From assembly GCF_006345805.1 (NCBI RefSeq), contig NC_043001.1, positions 17,732,001 through 17,796,000 on the forward strand: a stretch of 64,000 bases of DNA, in the 5' to 3' direction. Both the position numbers and the translations under genes were made by a program. This document shows, piece by piece, positions 22,101 to 28,100 of the stretch (the first letter of the stretch is position 1; each line of letters begins with the position of its first letter). A model generated the notes under the pieces. That model searched no databases, was not told the origin of the DNA, and saw nothing but the letters and a program-made list of their open reading frames with translations. The DNA is from Octopus sinensis (Eukaryota).

Positions 22101-25100
22101 TATACTATCAAACCAAATACTGTTCAAACATCTTCGAGTAATTGTGACTTTATTTGCCACGAAAACACTCAACAGAATGAATACAATAAACGAAAGAGAG
22201 ACAGAGAGAGACAGAGACAGAGACAGAGAAAGAGAGGGAAAGAGAAAGCATTTCATCTAAAAGAAGATTGATGTTTTCTTAAGAACCAAATTTTCAACCT
22301 CCATCACCTCGTTGTCTAAATGTCTCTTCTGCGTATTTGTTCTGTCGGCTGCTACTATTATGAGTGAACGGACAGACTACCCAGTCAAGATCGATAAGTC
22401 GTTAACACACACACACACACACACACACAAGAGAGAGAGAGAGAATAAAACTGAAACTTTTCAACATAAACTAGAAAGTACCTCATGAGAAGTTCAATAG
22501 GAATATAAAATTATGTAAAAAGAATCAATATCTTCACGCTATTTTCTGAAAAAAAAAAAAATGTTTTTGTTTAGTTAATAATAAAGAAACTGTCTTGTTT
22601 TTCACTGTTCAAACTAATCAATAATTTTGTTACTTTCGGCAAATCAGAATTACACTTATTATCATTATTATCATTATTATTATTATTATTATACATAAAG
22701 TATAAATTGAACATTGAGTCTAAACTCCATTCATTAAACCTATTATGTTATAGCCGACTAGCCCAATATATTTGTTCAATTCAAGGATTGAATTAAAAAG
22801 AAAACTCTAATATCATATATATATTTTAGCTTCTAGTTTATTTTTTTTTTGTTAATATTCATTTTCACGTTTTGATTTTTTTCAAAATCTTTTATATTAG
22901 TAAATTTTTTTTTCCTGTTCCATTGTTAAGTTGAATGGAACAGGATAATCACGGATAGACCGACCTAAATCTTCAATATCATCGTAGCTTGCTTCGATGA
23001 CGTCTGGGATTCAACATTTTCTTTCTGTTTTATATATATATATATAGATATATATATATATATATATATATATATATATATATATATATATTATATATAT
23101 ATATATGTGTGTGTGTGTGTGTGTGTGTTGTGTGTGTGTGTGTGTGTGTGTGTGTGTGCGTGAGGCGCAATGGCCTAGTGGTTAGGGCAGCGGACTCGCG
23201 GTCATAAGATCACGATTTCGATTCGAGGACCGGGCGTTGTGAGTATTTATTGAGCAAAAGTACCTAAACCTCCACGAGGTTCCGGCAGGAGCTCGTGGCG
23301 AACCCTGCAAGTACTCTTTCACCACAATTTTCTACCAATCTTTCTTCCTGTTCCTGCTGTACCTGTATTTTTCAAAGGAACCAGCCTTGGCACACTCTGT
23401 GTCATGCTGAATCTCCCCGAGTACGCGTGTCTGTGGAGTGTTCAGCCACTTGCACGTTAATTTCACGAGCAGGCTGTTCTGTTGATTGGATCAACTGGAA
23501 CCCTCGTCGTCGTAACCGACGGAGTGCCACGCATATATATATATATATATATGATTGGGCCAATATACTATATTTGCTACAATACGTGTGTGTGTGTGTT
23601 ATCTGAAACTGTTTGATTCGGCTCCGTGTTGCTTCAAGTTTCGCAGGCCCCACGATCGGGCGCCCAACTCCTACAGGCTATATATTTATAATTCATTCAA
23701 TATTACTTGGATAATAACCTCCGAACGTGCATTTAAATGCTCCTATAGTGTTATCGGCTACCATATACCATCATATGAGCTGGATAAGCATATGAAAATC
23801 TGTTAGTGCATAGAGTTCGTATAAAATTTACACAAGGAGAAGGTGGAAAAAAACAGGTCTAAATAAATTCCATTTGTTTCTGAGCTGATGAATTACTGGC
23901 ACACGACTGTAGCTGAAACATATTTATTTATTTACGTAATCTATATATATAAAACTCTAGTTGTGTGAGTGTCTGTCCCCTTCGATTTAGATTCCTAACT
24001 CCTCCCACATTTTGCGGTGCAGTTTAACCAAATTCGGGTATCTTATAGTCGTGATTCATATCGAGCCCGTCTGACTATTAGCGCGCGTCAACGATGAGTC
24101 TACGATTTTAAAAATAATTTAACATCATTTTTTATTCCATTTTAATGCATAAAATGCATCGTATGTCGATGGAGGCGGAGTTGGCGTCCACGCTCACAGC
24201 TGCACCTGTTTGCTTCTCCCCCTTCCCTCCCTCGTGAAGCTGTGGGGAAGGGAGTGTAAAGAAATCAACGTTGTAATGCGTTGTGAAGGAAACCAGCGTT
24301 CTTTTAGAATAACGACTTCATGGCTTGAAGACACCAAAACAAAAATGGCTAAGAAAGCCCGAATTTATAAGGGAAGTAACTCTCTAAAAATGCTTATATA
24401 GTTATTTCCCTTACAAACCCGAGCAACGCCGGGCGATACTGCTAGCTATTTATAAAATAATTTTATGTAATGTATGTGAATGAAAAGTCAGCAGCTTAAT
24501 GCTAGGCCACGGCAAAGAAACAGATGTTGTGACTTGTTATTAAAGCCTGTTTTATCCGTCTCTCTGAGTACCAGGCAGTGGCTGTCATGGCTTTTGATCT
24601 TAACTGATTAGAAGTGTTATTATGTACATTGTTTTGTCTTTGTATAAAAGACGGGCTACAGCAAATATTCTGCTCAATACCACAGATTTGCTTGTCAGTT
24701 GTTTGACCTTAATCAGTTAAGCATGTCCCTTGGTGGCCGACGATGTGTGCATCTCTGATCACGAGCAGAAGTAGTGGGGGAACATCATAGCCATGTGTTG
24801 GGAGGGATTCTTTGGGGTTTGAATAATTCACCTTTGGAAACATGGGTGTTTTGTTCATCATCCTTAAAACAACCCTTATTCAGGGACCTCTTGGGTGGGA
24901 TGAGCGACTCGACGTGAAGAAAATTGCAGAAGTATAACTAATTTATTACTCATAGACTTTAACAACAAAATCTTATACGGACCCCCAAAGGTCATATGAA
25001 CCCTAGTTGAAAACCACTACTCTACAAGATACAATTGTTATAGTAATGGTTGTTATGGAGACGGCTGCAATTGGCTATAGTTGTTATGGTGATGGTTGCT

Positions 25101-28100
25101 ATGGAGACGGCTGCAATAGTGGTGTTAGTTATGGTGATGGTTGGTATGATAATAGGGATGGTTGCTATCATGATGGCTGTGACGGCAATGGTTGCTATGG
25201 TGATGGCTGTCATGGCAATGGTTGTTATGGTGATGGTTGTTACGGTGATGGTAGTGTTACTGACTGCGATAGTTGTTATTATTCTGTTTAGCCCCAGGTC
25301 AAACTTATGATTAAAGGCATTCCAAAAGTGACCATCCACTCTGTTGCACACGTGCGTGAGTAGGTGCGTCACTCCAGATAGTGTATCTAGAACAACATTA
25401 GCCAGTATGTCCATTTTTTAAGACGGTAAGATGTGGGATAAAGGAAATTTGGCTGCTATTTCTAACAGGTGGACTGGGCCGAGCCTCGTTGAGGTTCCTT
25501 CATTGACTCATTCATTTAATGATAGTGTTTTTGTTGTTGTTACACCTTAGGTCAGGTCTTATCAAGAAGTTCATATATTCAATGGTATCCCAGCACTCAC
25601 AATCCGTCTTTGTTTTTCTTTCTTTATATATATATATATATATATATATATATATATAATATATATATATATATATATATATATATATTTTTACCCTATA
25701 GAATTATCTAGAACTGTATTATTGTGTCCTTAAGAGCGCGAGCAAGCAGAATCGTTAGCACACCGGACCGGACGAAATACCTATCAACATTTTGTTCGTC
25801 TTTACGTTTATGCTGCCAAGGTCGACTTTGCCATTCGTCCTATCGGAATTGATAAAATAAGTAGCAGTTGAGCCCTGGGATCGATGTATTTAACTGACCC
25901 CCATCCCTCAAAATTTCAGGCCTTGTGCCTATACTAGAAAGGGCTATTAACGTATTCTTGCCTTTATTTTAAGTTATTTGTATATGTTTTGAAATAGATT
26001 TAGTTGTTATTTCTAGCATGTCGAAGGACCACTGAAAGGCTTCATCCCACTCGTGGTTGATGATGCTAATTAACTGAGATAAGTGTAAGGGCTGGTTTTG
26101 ATGGTATTGGTGCGGGTAGTGAAGTGGTGACGAATGTGGTGCGGATTAACGATGCTAATATTGGGTTGTCCGGAAAGTTCGTGCCGATTTACAGTACCTT
26201 ACCTTTCAACTTATTTTAGAACATGGTTGAGTCCATGAAATAGGATTTGACTACACCTCCATTTAGAGCAGAGTTTAAGCTATCTTTTCGTGGAGGAAGG
26301 TTTATCTTCCTATAACCTGTGTTAATTCTGTAACCCTTTAAAATGGAAGATAACAAAGTTCATTTTCGGCACTTGATGCTTTGGGAACCAGACAAAAATT
26401 GCTGCAGCTCGGTTGGGATGTGTTACCCCCACCCTCCCTATTTCCCAGATATTGCTCCTTAGGATTTCCACTTATTCAGGTCTCTGCAGAATAGTCTTAA
26501 TGGTAAAAATTTCAATTCCTTGGATGACGTAAAAAGATACCTTGATGAATTCTTTGCCATGAAACCACCTCAATTCTGGGAAGGGTATTTTCAAGTTAAA
26601 GGAAAGATGGAGACACGTTGTGCAACAAAATGGTTCATATTTGGTTGGTTAAAAATGTAATGGCAAGTATTTATTGGCCTTTTTCTTTCCTTTAAAAACC
26701 GGCACGGACTTTCCGGGCAACCCAATGAATTCTTTGCTATGAAACCACCTCAATTCTGGGAAAAAGGGTATTTTCAAGTTAAAGGAAAGATGGAAACGCA
26801 TTGTGCAACAAAATGGTTCATATTTGGTTGATTAAAAATGTAATGGCAAGTATTTATTGGCCTTTTTCTTTCCTTTAAAAACCGGCACGGACTTTCCGGG
26901 CAACCCAATGAATTCTTTGCTATGAAACCACCTCAATTCTGGGAAAAAGGGTATTTTCAAGTTAAAGGAAAGATGGAAACGCATTGTGCAACAAAATGGT
27001 TCATATTTGGTTGATTAAAAATGTAATGGCAAGTATTTATTGGCCTTTTTCTTTCCTTTAAAAACCGGCACGGACTTTCCGGGCAACCCAATGAATTCTT
27101 TGCCATGAAACCACCTCAATTCTGGGAAGAGGGTATTTTCAAGTTAAAGGAAAGATGGAAACGCATTGTGCAACAAAATGGTTCATATTTGGTTGGTTAA
27201 AAATGTAATGGCAAGTATTTATTGGCCTTTTTCTTTCCTTTAAAAACCGGCACGGACTTTCCGGGCAACCCAATGAATTCTTTGCTATGAAACCACCTCA
27301 ATTCTGGGAAAAAGGGTATTTTCAAGTTAAAGGAAAGATGGAAACGCATTGTGCAACAAAATGGTTCATATTTGGTTGGTTAAAAATGTAATGGCAAGTA
27401 TTTATTGGCCTTTTTCTTTCCTTTAAAAACCGGCACGGACTTTCCGGGCAACCCAATGAATTCTTTGCTATGAAACCACCTCAATTCTGGGAAAAAGGGT
27501 ATTTTCAAGTTAAAGAAAGATGGAGAAACGCATTGTGCAACAAAATGGTTCATATTTGGTTTGTTAAAATGTATATGGCAAGTATTTATTGGCCTTTTTC
27601 TTTCCTTTAAAAACCGGCACGGACTTTCCGGGCAACCCAATGAATTCTTTGCTATGAAACCACCTCAATTCTGGGAAAAAGGGTATTTTCAAGTTAAAGG
27701 AAAGATGGAAACGCATTGTGCAACAAAATGGTTCATATTTGGTTGATTAAAAATGTAATGGCAATATTTATTGACTCTTTGCTTTCCTTTAAAAATCGGC
27801 AAGAACTTTCCGGACAACCCAATAGTAATAGCGATAAAAGCAGTTGCTGTGGCGGTGGTAGTGGTTGCTGTCGTTGTCATGGTGGTGGTGATGGTTGTAG
27901 TGGTTGCTAGGATAGTAGTAGCTGGGATTAGCAGTGATTGGGACGCTGGCGGTTGTGATGGTTGTTGCAATGCTTGTGATGACTGGCTGCGATGGTAGTA
28001 GCTGCGTCAATGGTGGTTAAGGAGGAACCGTGATGGGGGGGGGGGGTGATGATGGTTGCGATGGTGATCGATCTAATGGCGGTTGCAATGACAATGTGAT

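What the first reader, a model, noticed from the sequence alone, without database searches (positions are those of the whole stretch)
25034..25250. Tandem array of RFX-binding X-boxes inside the RFX4 gene's own largest intron: candidate autoregulatory element
Seen: a ~215-bp repeat of 15-bp period with consensus G-GTTGYT-AT-GGWGAY. It looks at first like a 'GCYGD' peptide repeat, but each 14-mer is a quasi-palindromic X-box. GTTGTTATGGAGAC (25049) and GTTGCTATGGAGAC (25095) read GTCTCCATAACAAC and GTCTCCATAGCAAC on the other strand, fitting the strict nematode X-box consensus GTHNYY-AT-RRNAAC. Units at 25080, 25191 and 25221 fit the relaxed RTHNYYWTRRNRAC on the minus strand, and about 5 further units differ by 1-2 bases. 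I saw no comparable cluster elsewhere in the window. Established: RFX proteins bind X-boxes, and autoregulation through X-boxes is known for yeast Crt1/Rfx1 and mammalian RFX1. Inference: a homotypic array of about 10 sites in an intron of an RFX gene could act as a feedback enhancer, silencer or sponge whose strength varies with repeat number.
Basis: partly seen in the sequence, partly recalled or inferred. Interest (0 to 1): 0.78.

Follow-up and report, generated by a model that had tools for sequence, protein, structure and literature searches.

The report
X-box-like minisatellite in RFX4 intron
A decaying 15-base tandem repeat deep in an intron of an RFX4-like gene does contain five sequences that look like good binding sites for RFX proteins, but the evidence favours a chance resemblance copied by tandem duplication over a proven self-regulating switch.

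Summary
At 25034-25252 there is a degenerate tandem array, period 15 with a 45/46-bp higher-order unit. Both strict X-box matches in the window lie in it, as do five of the ten positions that fit the relaxed consensus. A weight matrix built from 30 validated C. elegans X-boxes scores five units at 15.1-21.2, inside the validated range. The gene is RFX4-like and lies on the minus strand. The array sits in a 15,293-bp intron, the largest in the window.

The functional reading is not established.
- All matches descend from one founding unit, and the two strict hits are one 46-bp duplication.
- Outside the array, X-box counts equal chance.
- The array is a triplet-periodic GGY-TGY-TAT-GGW-GAY sequence. 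Triplet shuffles give an X-box-grade site in 4-8% of trials, and a related GT-rich tract 3 kb away also makes near-X-boxes.
- Ten of 15 units score below the validated range.
- The only invariant column is an "N" of the X-box.
- The same intron in four distant relatives has no such site.

No cephalopod sequence could be reached, so conservation and genome-wide frequency remain untested. RFX4-like genes of other animals show a modest excess of single intronic X-boxes, which keeps the autoregulation idea alive at about 15-20%.

The parts
25034..25252 (-). Degenerate minisatellite of about 15 units of 15 bp, with a 45/46-bp higher-order unit. On the + strand the unit is GGTTGYTATGGWGAY alternating with GGCTGYNAYGGCAAT. 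On the minus strand (the sense strand of the gene) the consensus is ATCACCATARCAAC.
   Evidence: Strong 3-base periodicity: 86% pyrimidine and 68% T at one phase.
25095..25108 (-). Best X-box-like unit, GTCTCCATAGCAAC. It fits the strict consensus, scores 21.2, and is one base from the validated C. elegans site GTCTCTATAGCAAC (Y110A7A.20).
25049..25062 (-). X-box-like unit GTCTCCATAACAAC. It fits the strict consensus and scores 18.8. It is the same position of the 46-bp higher-order unit as 25095.
25191..25204 (-). X-box-like unit ATCACCATAGCAAC. It fits the relaxed consensus and scores 17.5.
25080..25093 (-). X-box-like unit ATCACCATAACAAC. It fits the relaxed consensus and scores 15.1.
25221..25234 (-). 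X-box-like unit ATCACCATAACAAC. It fits the relaxed consensus and scores 15.1.
25206..25219 (-). B-type unit ATTGCCATGACAGC. It is a near-X-box (11.7 on the minus strand, 11.3 on the plus strand) spoiled by AAC>AGC and G>A at the outer positions.
21983..37275 (-). Host intron (c-d) of the RFX4-like gene: 15,293 bp with GT..AG ends. At least 46% is repeat recognisable within this window alone. The array lies 3,051 bp upstream of exon d and 12,023 bp downstream of exon c, in gene sense.
37276..37376 (-). Exon c of the RFX BCD domain (..[34 protein letters not shown]).
   Evidence: Pfam PF25340, E 9.7e-06. tblastn and splice sites.
21779..21982 (-). Exon d of the RFX BCD domain ([24 protein letters not shown]...). 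It continues exon c directly in the protein.
55081..55215 (-). First exon of the RFX DNA-binding domain. Ends are approximate, taken from the tblastn hit. Further DNA-binding-domain pieces are at 51838-51906 and 49296-49325.
   Evidence: Pfam PF02257, E 1.6e-13. tblastn. PDB 1DP7, E 2.4e-25.
27840..28600 (-). GT-rich, triplet-periodic low-complexity tract of the same sequence class as the array. It produces near-X-boxes on the same strand (27873 ACCACCATGACAAC 13.7; 28055 ATCACCATCGCAAC 13.0; 28082 at 10.4) without any 15-bp tandem structure.
24631..24925 (.). Interspersed repeat, 88% identical to 53935-53642 (inverted). It ends 110 bp upstream of the array. Homology does not extend into the array.

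Best explanation
The element is a lineage-specific, decaying minisatellite in a repeat-rich, expanded intron.

Inferred origin: a short triplet-periodic sequence (GGY-TGY-TAT-GGW-GAY on the + strand) was amplified head to tail by replication slippage or unequal exchange. This happened first as 15-mers and later as a 45/46-bp higher-order unit. The copies have since drifted apart.

Read on the other strand, the founding 15-mer is ATCACC-AT-ARCAAC, which happens to fall within the loose nematode X-box consensus. Amplification therefore produced several X-box-grade copies at once.

Shown here: the array, its periodicity, its decay, its X-box scores, its intronic position and the compositional bias. 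Inferred: that it is selectively neutral.

The best units would probably bind an RFX DNA-binding domain in vitro. Any binding in vivo is most likely incidental, not a built-in feedback device.
For: - One founding event. The two strict hits are 46 bp apart, at the same position of a 46-bp higher-order repeat with 84% matches. All five high-scoring units share ATCACC/GTCTCC-AT-ARCAAC.
- No background excess. Outside the array, the relaxed consensus has 5 matches against 5.8 expected, and only one site scores >=15 in 128 kb of strand.
- Compositional bias, measured by shuffling. Triplet shuffles of the array give at least one site >=15 in 4-8% of trials, against 0.14% for base shuffles.
- Compositional bias, measured independently. 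The triplet-periodic GT-rich tract at 27.84-28.6 kb has 3 sites >=10, all on the same strand, where about 0.13 are expected.
- Decay. Adjacent units match at only 62%. Ten of 15 units score below 15 and five score below 2.
- No binding-shaped conservation. Column conservation against X-box information gives Spearman 0.50, p = 0.07. The only invariant column (C, 15 of 15) is an N position of the consensus.
- Context. The intron is 15.3 kb and at least 46% repeat. There is no CpG island. The array is 3 kb from the nearest exon.
- No counterpart in distant relatives. Intron c-d in four RFX4-like loci of other animals is 0.18-4.1 kb. L001-L003 have no site >=11 there and L004 none >=10.
- Human precedent. 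RFX motifs are not enriched at the RFX genes' own regulatory regions (PMC5838959).
Against: - The coincidence is not trivial. Only this one of 30 tandem arrays in the window is X-box-like. My rough estimate of the chance that some array in an RFX-gene window is X-box-grade is 1-8%.
- The best unit scores 21.2, above the median of validated nematode sites (17.8). It combines half-sites seen in proven X-boxes (bbs-5, xbx-5, bbs-1, Y110A7A.20).
- The encoded protein keeps the DNA-contacting wing of RFX1.
- RFX4-like genes of other animals carry more strong intronic X-boxes than shuffles predict. There are 4 against 0.9-1.2 expected (P about 0.013), and one lies in the same intron c-d.
- Tandem X-boxes do drive RFX-dependent reporters, as in pEP4-Luc (PMC2797782).
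- Neutrality itself was not tested. No cephalopod orthologue, population data or chromatin data were available.
Confidence: 0.7

Rival explanations
1. The array is a functional homotypic cluster of RFX sites. RFX4, or another RFX protein, binds the five or more competent units in the gene's own intron. The array then works as a feedback enhancer, silencer or local sink, with strength set by the number of intact units. A variant of this idea is that it serves an intronic alternative promoter for an isoform lacking the DNA-binding domain, as is known for human RFX4.
For: - Five units score 15.1-21.2, within the range of validated X-boxes.
- It is the only X-box-like array among 30 in the window.
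- The DNA-binding domain has a canonical wing.
- Genes with several X-boxes are known, and the sites interact (F25B4.2, yeast RNR genes, MAP1A; PMC3245922).
- Four tandem X-boxes drive an RFX-dependent reporter (PMC2797782).
- Intronic X-boxes are in excess in RFX4-like genes of other animals. One lies 328 bp upstream of exon d, in the same intron.
- Human RFX4 has widely spaced start sites and isoforms without the DNA-binding domain (PMC5838959).
Against: - The sites are not independent; all descend from one unit.
- The compositional null reaches 4-8%.
- Ten of 15 units score below the validated range, and the invariant column is irrelevant to binding.
- One half-site (GGWGAY) has two mismatches to RGYAAC, and the array has no match to the vertebrate-style GTNRCC(N2)RGYAAC.
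- The position is deep in an intron and surrounded by repeats.
- Distant orthologues have nothing in this intron in four loci.
Confidence: 0.17
2. The array is the internal or terminal minisatellite of a dispersed mobile element, so the same array occurs at many loci and says nothing about this gene.
For: - An interspersed repeat (24631-24925, with a second copy at 53935-53642) ends 110 bp upstream.
- SINE-like copies and a 183-bp satellite lie just downstream.
- The window is at least 42% repeat.
Against: - No second copy of the array or of its immediate flanks exists in the 64-kb window.
- Homology with the upstream element stops at 24925 and does not resume after the array.
- No similar open reading frame was found among 5.8 billion predicted proteins, although cephalopods seem poorly represented there.
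Confidence: 0.08
3. The array is coding sequence. It would be an exon, or a remnant of a nested gene on the + strand, encoding a Gly/Cys/Tyr/Asp-rich (GCYGD)n peptide.
For: - The + strand frame is open for 94 codons and the repeat is a multiple of three.
Against: - The minus strand is open too (130 codons), as expected for triplet-periodic simple sequence.
- There is no Pfam match.
- There is no homologue in the 5.8-billion-protein collection; only 4 word-sharing candidates appeared and none was significant.
- The open frame starts at TTG and has no signal peptide-like start. Units differ by indels that break the 15-bp register (25064 to 25080, 25140 to 25161).
Confidence: 0.02

Closest known systems
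C. elegans X-box promoter motifs of DAF-19/RFX target genes (31 validated sites, Table 1 of PMC3245922)
   Same: It is a 14-bp imperfect inverted repeat with an AT spacer. The best unit, GTCTCCATAGCAAC, is one base from the validated GTCTCTATAGCAAC. It joins half-sites found in bbs-5 and xbx-5 (GTCTCC) and in bbs-1 (ATAGCAAC). Five units score within the validated range.
   Different: [quoted passage not shown] Here there are about 15 tandem copies, most of them degenerate, 3 kb from the nearest exon in a 15-kb intron of a non-nematode gene.
Genes regulated through several X-boxes (C. elegans F25B4.2, yeast RNR2-4 under Crt1, human MAP1A; summarised in PMC3245922) and the synthetic 4x X-box reporter pEP4-Luc (PMC2797782)
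   Same: More than one RFX site lies in one regulatory region. Site number and strength tune the output. The tandem synthetic copies are functional.
   Different: Those have two to four discrete sites at promoters or a first exon, each shown to matter by mutation. This is a natural minisatellite with no functional data.
Autorepression of RFX1 and of yeast Crt1 through X-boxes in their own promoters (cited in PMC5838959 as possibly the only exception among human RFX genes)
   Same: It is an RFX gene carrying RFX sites within its own locus.
   Different: The known cases are promoter sites with demonstrated binding and repression. RFX4 autoregulation has not been reported. The human survey found no over-representation of RFX motifs at RFX gene promoters or enhancers.
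Ordinary intronic minisatellites and cryptically simple triplet-periodic sequence
   Same: Head-to-tail copies of a 15-bp unit, a higher-order 45-bp structure, decay of copies, 3-base periodicity, location in repeat-rich non-coding DNA, and a related GT-rich tract nearby.
   Different: Nothing that I could test. The only unusual trait is that the unit resembles the binding site of the host gene's own product.

Membership tests
X-box (RFX binding site) | Two 6-bp half-sites in inverted orientation separated by 1-3 bases, fitting GTHNYY-AT-RRNAAC or RTHNYY-WT-RRNRAC | tested here: met
   Two units fit the strict consensus and five fit the relaxed one. Their matrix scores of 15.1-21.2 compare with a validated median of 17.8.
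X-box (RFX binding site) | Both half-sites close to RGYAAC (palindromic GTNRCC N0-3 RGYAAC type) | tested here: not met
   One half is AGCAAC or AACAAC. The other, GGAGAC or GGTGAT, has two mismatches. GTNRCCNNRGYAAC has 0 matches in the window. Scores on the opposite strand are only 5.3-13.2.
X-box (RFX binding site) | Bound by an RFX DNA-binding domain | not testable with these tools
   The encoded domain matches RFX1 in 1DP7 (E 2.4e-25) with an identical wing, [16 protein letters not shown]. This makes binding plausible but does not show it.
X-box (RFX binding site) | Promoter-proximal position (validated nematode sites lie within 500 bp upstream of the ATG) | tested here: not met
   The array is 3,051 bp from exon d and 12,023 bp from exon c, inside a 15,293-bp intron. 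The positional rule is from PMC3245922.
X-box (RFX binding site) | Conserved at the orthologous position in related species | tested here: inconclusive
   Intron c-d in four distant RFX4-like loci has no site (>=11 in L001-L003, >=10 in L004). One further locus, L023, has a strong single X-box in that intron. No cephalopod sequence was reachable.
Minisatellite | Head-to-tail copies of a 10-60-bp unit in non-coding DNA | tested here: met
   Tandem Repeats Finder gives period 15 with 14.1 copies, plus periods 45/46. The array is intronic. There is no protein family or homologue for either open frame.
Minisatellite | Copy-number polymorphism between individuals | not testable with these tools
   No second assembly or read set of the source species could be retrieved.
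RFX autoregulatory element (RFX1/Crt1 type) | X-boxes in the gene's own promoter that are occupied by its product and change its transcription | not tested
   The promoter is not identified in the window. The array is intronic, about 30 kb downstream of the first DNA-binding-domain exon. Occupancy and effect need experiments.
Homotypic binding-site cluster enhancer | Several competent sites for one factor within a few hundred bp, beyond chance, arising or maintained independently | tested here: inconclusive
   Five sites score >=15 in 190 bp, against one elsewhere in the window. They are tandem copies of one unit, and the triplet-matched null gives 4-8% for a founding site.

The most novel reading that the evidence does not exclude
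A natural tandem array of X-boxes in an intron of an RFX4-type gene is bound by RFX proteins. It acts as a copy-number-tunable auto- or cross-regulatory element, either as a feedback enhancer or silencer or as the control region of an internal promoter. It would be a cephalopod-lineage elaboration of single intronic X-boxes, which appear to recur in RFX4-like genes of other invertebrates.
Probability: 0.15. Interest if true: 0.65.

Novelty: new member of a known kind. Interest (0 to 1): 0.3.

Why it matters
If the array were functional, it would be a natural case in which a transcription factor's feedback strength is set by a mutable repeat number. It would also extend RFX autoregulation beyond RFX1/Crt1 to the RFX4 group, which controls neural and ciliary programmes. 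That would interest people who study regulatory evolution and cephalopod nervous systems.

As things stand, it is mainly a caution. Triplet-periodic simple sequence of the GGY-TGY-TAT-GGW-GAY type generates X-box-grade motifs at tens of times the background rate. Consensus-string or matrix scans for RFX targets in repeat-rich genomes will therefore pick up such arrays.

The side observation is a cheap lead that can be tested with public genomes: strong single X-boxes appear more often than expected inside RFX4-like genes of other animals.

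Tried and rejected
- Orthologous or same-species DNA. Exact look-ups of the two array open frames and of the exon-d open frame found nothing. 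Homologue searches with the DNA-binding domain and with exon d returned no hit above 77% (exon d) or 89% (DNA-binding-domain exon), and none from a named cephalopod. The conservation and copy-number tests were therefore impossible. The Dreissena hit had no retrievable locus.
- Coding reading. Rejected because there is no Pfam family, no homologue of the + strand frame, and both strands are open.
- Part of a mobile element. Not supported. Self-BLAST finds no second copy. Homology with the upstream repeat ends at 24925, and a gapped alignment beyond that point is noise.
- Structured RNA. The sense-strand transcript folds no better than shuffles (z = +1.07). Rfam has no hit at the array.
- CpG island or promoter-like composition. 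None.
- One long GT-rich tract from 25.0 to 28.6 kb split by insertions. There is only weak similarity (E 4e-4) and no GT bias in the unique spacers. I kept this only as "same sequence class".
- Literature. The exact 14-mers appear only as unrelated primers. No paper links RFX4 with octopus, or RFX X-boxes with minisatellites. The X-box table of the DAF-19M preprint is not held.
- Selection test across units. Underpowered and not significant.

Full report
**What is there**

The window is AT-rich (63%) eukaryotic DNA packed with micro- and minisatellites; Tandem Repeats Finder returns 292 rows. At 25035-25252 it reports a tandem array of period 15 (14.1 copies, 62% matches, 6% indels). The same stretch also reads as period 45/46 (69-84% matches).

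The + strand alternates two unit types, GGTTGYTATGGWGAY and GGCTGYNAYGGCAAT. One + strand frame translates to ...[12 protein letters not shown]..., and the minus strand is open as well.

**The X-box observation**

- The strict consensus GTHNYYATRRNAAC occurs twice in the window, at 25049 (GTCTCCATAACAAC) and 25095 (GTCTCCATAGCAAC), both on the minus strand.
- The relaxed RTHNYYWTRRNRAC occurs at 10 positions. Five are in the array: 25049, 25080, 25095, 25191 and 25221.
- Eight more array positions lie within 1-2 mismatches. Background gives 3.4 such positions per 243 bp, so they add nothing.

To go beyond consensus strings, I built a log-odds matrix from the 30 validated 14-bp C. elegans X-boxes in Table 1 of PMC3245922. 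Leave-one-out scores of the validated sites have a median of 17.8 and a 10th percentile of 15.2.

| Array unit (minus strand) | Score |
|---|---|
| 25095 | 21.2 |
| 25049 | 18.8 |
| 25191 | 17.5 |
| 25080 | 15.1 |
| 25221 | 15.1 |
| 25206 | 11.7 |
| four further units | 6.7-8.6 |
| five further units | below 2 |

The best unit is one base from the validated GTCTCTATAGCAAC. It combines half-sites present in bbs-5, xbx-5 and bbs-1.

Elsewhere in the window only one site reaches 15: 6883 GTTACGATGGCAAC, inside a coding exon. None of the other 29 tandem arrays with period >=7 exceeds 6.7.

**Gene context**

- RFX DNA-binding-domain exons lie on the minus strand at 55215-55081, 51906-51838 and 49325-49296. 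The evidence is tblastn, Pfam PF02257 with E 1.6e-13, and PDB 1DP7 (the RFX1 domain bound to DNA) with E 2.4e-25 and an identical wing [16 protein letters not shown].
- Seven BCD-domain exons follow at 44.8, 38.6, 37.3, 21.9, 19.3, 17.8 and 16.2 kb. The evidence is Pfam PF25340 and 47-76% identity to a human RFX4 segment.
- The best named relatives of the DNA-binding domain are RFX4 proteins.
- Exon c ends at 37276 with a GTAAGT donor. Exon d starts at 21982 after a TTTTAG acceptor. The protein runs straight through (KVKFD-L-ARRF), so 21983-37275 is a single 15,293-bp intron.
- This is the largest intron in the window; the others measure 1.1-6.1 kb. The array lies 3,051 bp upstream of exon d in gene sense.

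The X-box-like reading is on the gene's sense strand. I could not verify that the organism is an octopod.

**Is it more than chance?**

As a cluster of independent sites, no.
- The two strict hits are exactly one 46-bp higher-order period apart. All good units are variants of one 14-mer.
- The strict count (2 observed, 0.67 expected) is reached by 22 of 100 dinucleotide shuffles.
- The relaxed excess (12 observed, 5.8 expected) disappears when the array is removed.

The real question is how likely it is that the founding unit is X-box-grade.
- For generic sequence, the rate of sites >=15 is about 8e-6 per position and strand. That puts the chance that some array in this window qualifies at roughly 3% (my estimate).
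- For this sequence class the rate is much higher. The array is strongly triplet-periodic, with 86% pyrimidine at one phase.
- Shuffling its triplets yields at least one site >=15 in 4-8% of trials, against 0.14% for base shuffles.
- Independently, the triplet-periodic GT-rich tract at 27.84-28.6 kb has no 15-bp repeat structure. It still produces ACCACCATGACAAC (13.7), ATCACCATCGCAAC (13.0) and ATTGTCATTGCAAC (10.4) on the same strand, where about 0.13 sites >=10 are expected.

X-box likeness is thus largely a by-product of GGY/TGY/TAT/GAY triplet sequence.

**Signs of selection for binding**

I found none.
- Only 5 of 15 units are competent.
- B-type units carry AGC in place of the essential AAC.
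- Column conservation correlates only weakly with X-box information (Spearman 0.50, p = 0.07).
- The single invariant column is an N position of the consensus.

**Surroundings**

- At least 46% of the intron is repeat detectable from this window alone.
- An interspersed repeat ends 110 bp upstream. A (TA)n run, SINE-like copies and a 183-bp satellite follow downstream.
- The array itself has no second copy in the window and is not part of the upstream element.
- There is no CpG island, no RNA structure, no Rfam hit at the array, no Pfam family and no protein homologue.

**Related sequences**

No cephalopod sequence could be reached. I retrieved 31 RFX4-like loci of other, unnamed animals from metagenome assemblies. 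Their exon d is 52-76% identical in protein to the window's.

In the four loci where intron c-d is complete, it measures 0.18-4.1 kb. L001-L003 have no site >=11 there and L004 none >=10. The array is therefore not an old feature of that intron.

Across all 157 kb, however, there are four distinct sites >=15:

| Locus and position | Sequence | Location |
|---|---|---|
| L002:11754 | GTTTCCATAGCAAC | intron e-f |
| L003:11258 | GTTGCCTAGGCAAC, a perfect palindrome | intron f-g |
| L011:1350 | TTTTCCATGGCAAC | 467 bp downstream of exon d |
| L023:1427 | GTTGCTATGGCAAC | 328 bp upstream of exon d |

Shuffles predict 0.9-1.2 such sites (P about 0.013). Two sites score >=20, against 0.04 expected (P about 0.007). 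This is a small sample with no non-RFX control set. It does hint that RFX4-type genes may be RFX targets through single intronic X-boxes.

For humans the published survey points the other way. [quoted passage not shown] The same paper documents widely spaced RFX4 start sites and isoforms without the DNA-binding domain. That leaves room for intronic control regions.

**Mechanism and verdict**

Most likely (about 0.7) this is an ordinary, lineage-specific, decaying minisatellite. Its founding unit happened to resemble an X-box, and slippage or unequal exchange copied that resemblance. The top units would probably bind an RFX domain in vitro, but a regulatory role is unproven.

In its favour are the few-percent coincidence, the quality of the best units, the intact DNA-binding domain, the precedent that multiple or tandem X-boxes work (PMC3245922; pEP4-Luc in PMC2797782), and the excess of X-boxes in other animals' RFX4-like genes.

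The remaining readings are less likely. A dispersed-element minisatellite gets about 0.08 and a coding repeat about 0.02.

The deciding data are a genome-wide census of such arrays, the orthologous intron in other cephalopods, chromatin and occupancy maps, and a binding assay.

Noticed in passing
L002:11754-11767; L003:11258-11271; L011:1350-1363; L023:1427-1440: Strong single X-boxes lie inside introns of RFX4-like genes of other, unnamed animals from metagenome assemblies. One is a perfect palindrome, GTTGCCTAGGCAAC. Another, GTTGCTATGGCAAC, lies 328 bp upstream of exon d. In 157 kb there are 4 sites >=15 against 0.9-1.2 expected (P about 0.013), and 2 sites >=20 against 0.04 expected. This may mean auto- or cross-regulation of RFX4-type genes outside vertebrates.
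   Followed up: partly
window 6883-6896: The only X-box-grade site outside the array is GTTACGATGGCAAC / GTTGCCATCGTAAC (16.0 and 14.2). It lies inside the putative C-terminal coding exon, where it encodes S-Y-D-G-N on the minus strand. It shows how Tyr/Asp/Gly/Asn codons can spell an X-box.
   Followed up: partly
window 27840-28600: A GT-rich, triplet-periodic low-complexity tract, (GGT)n-like with up to 56% GC and strong GC skew. It belongs to the same sequence class as the array and has near-X-boxes at 27873, 28055 and 28082.
   Followed up: yes
window 26545-27823 and 47609-48012: A 183-bp satellite with 7 copies at 96% identity. It directly follows a 343-bp element (26158-26500) that recurs inverted at 48012-47675 (93%). 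This looks like a mobile element with an expandable internal satellite.
   Followed up: no
window 12380-12880, 30075-30442, 43974-44528, 57009-57564: A SINE-like unit of about 185-190 bp occurs in short tandem pairs or triplets (92-96% identity) and as many dispersed fragments, for example 25814-25940.
   Followed up: no
L001:10076-10273 and 10608-10754: Exon d of the RFX BCD domain is present twice in tandem in one foreign locus (76% and 67% identity to the window peptide). These may be mutually exclusive alternative exons.
   Followed up: no
window 34273-34331 (-): The only Rfam hit in the window is a partial tRNA-like match (40.2 bits, model positions 8-63). It is probably the head of a tRNA-derived SINE, not a gene.
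   Followed up: no
window 61207-61306: An assembly gap of 100 N sits within microsatellite-rich sequence upstream of the DNA-binding-domain exons.
   Followed up: no
window 3311-3865 (+): A 184-codon open frame with C2H2-like motifs (CSVCARPCFSKAGLKSHLRSH, CQACGRECNSAGLKRHAKVH) lies downstream of the gene. It is probably a remnant of a mobile element.
   Followed up: no
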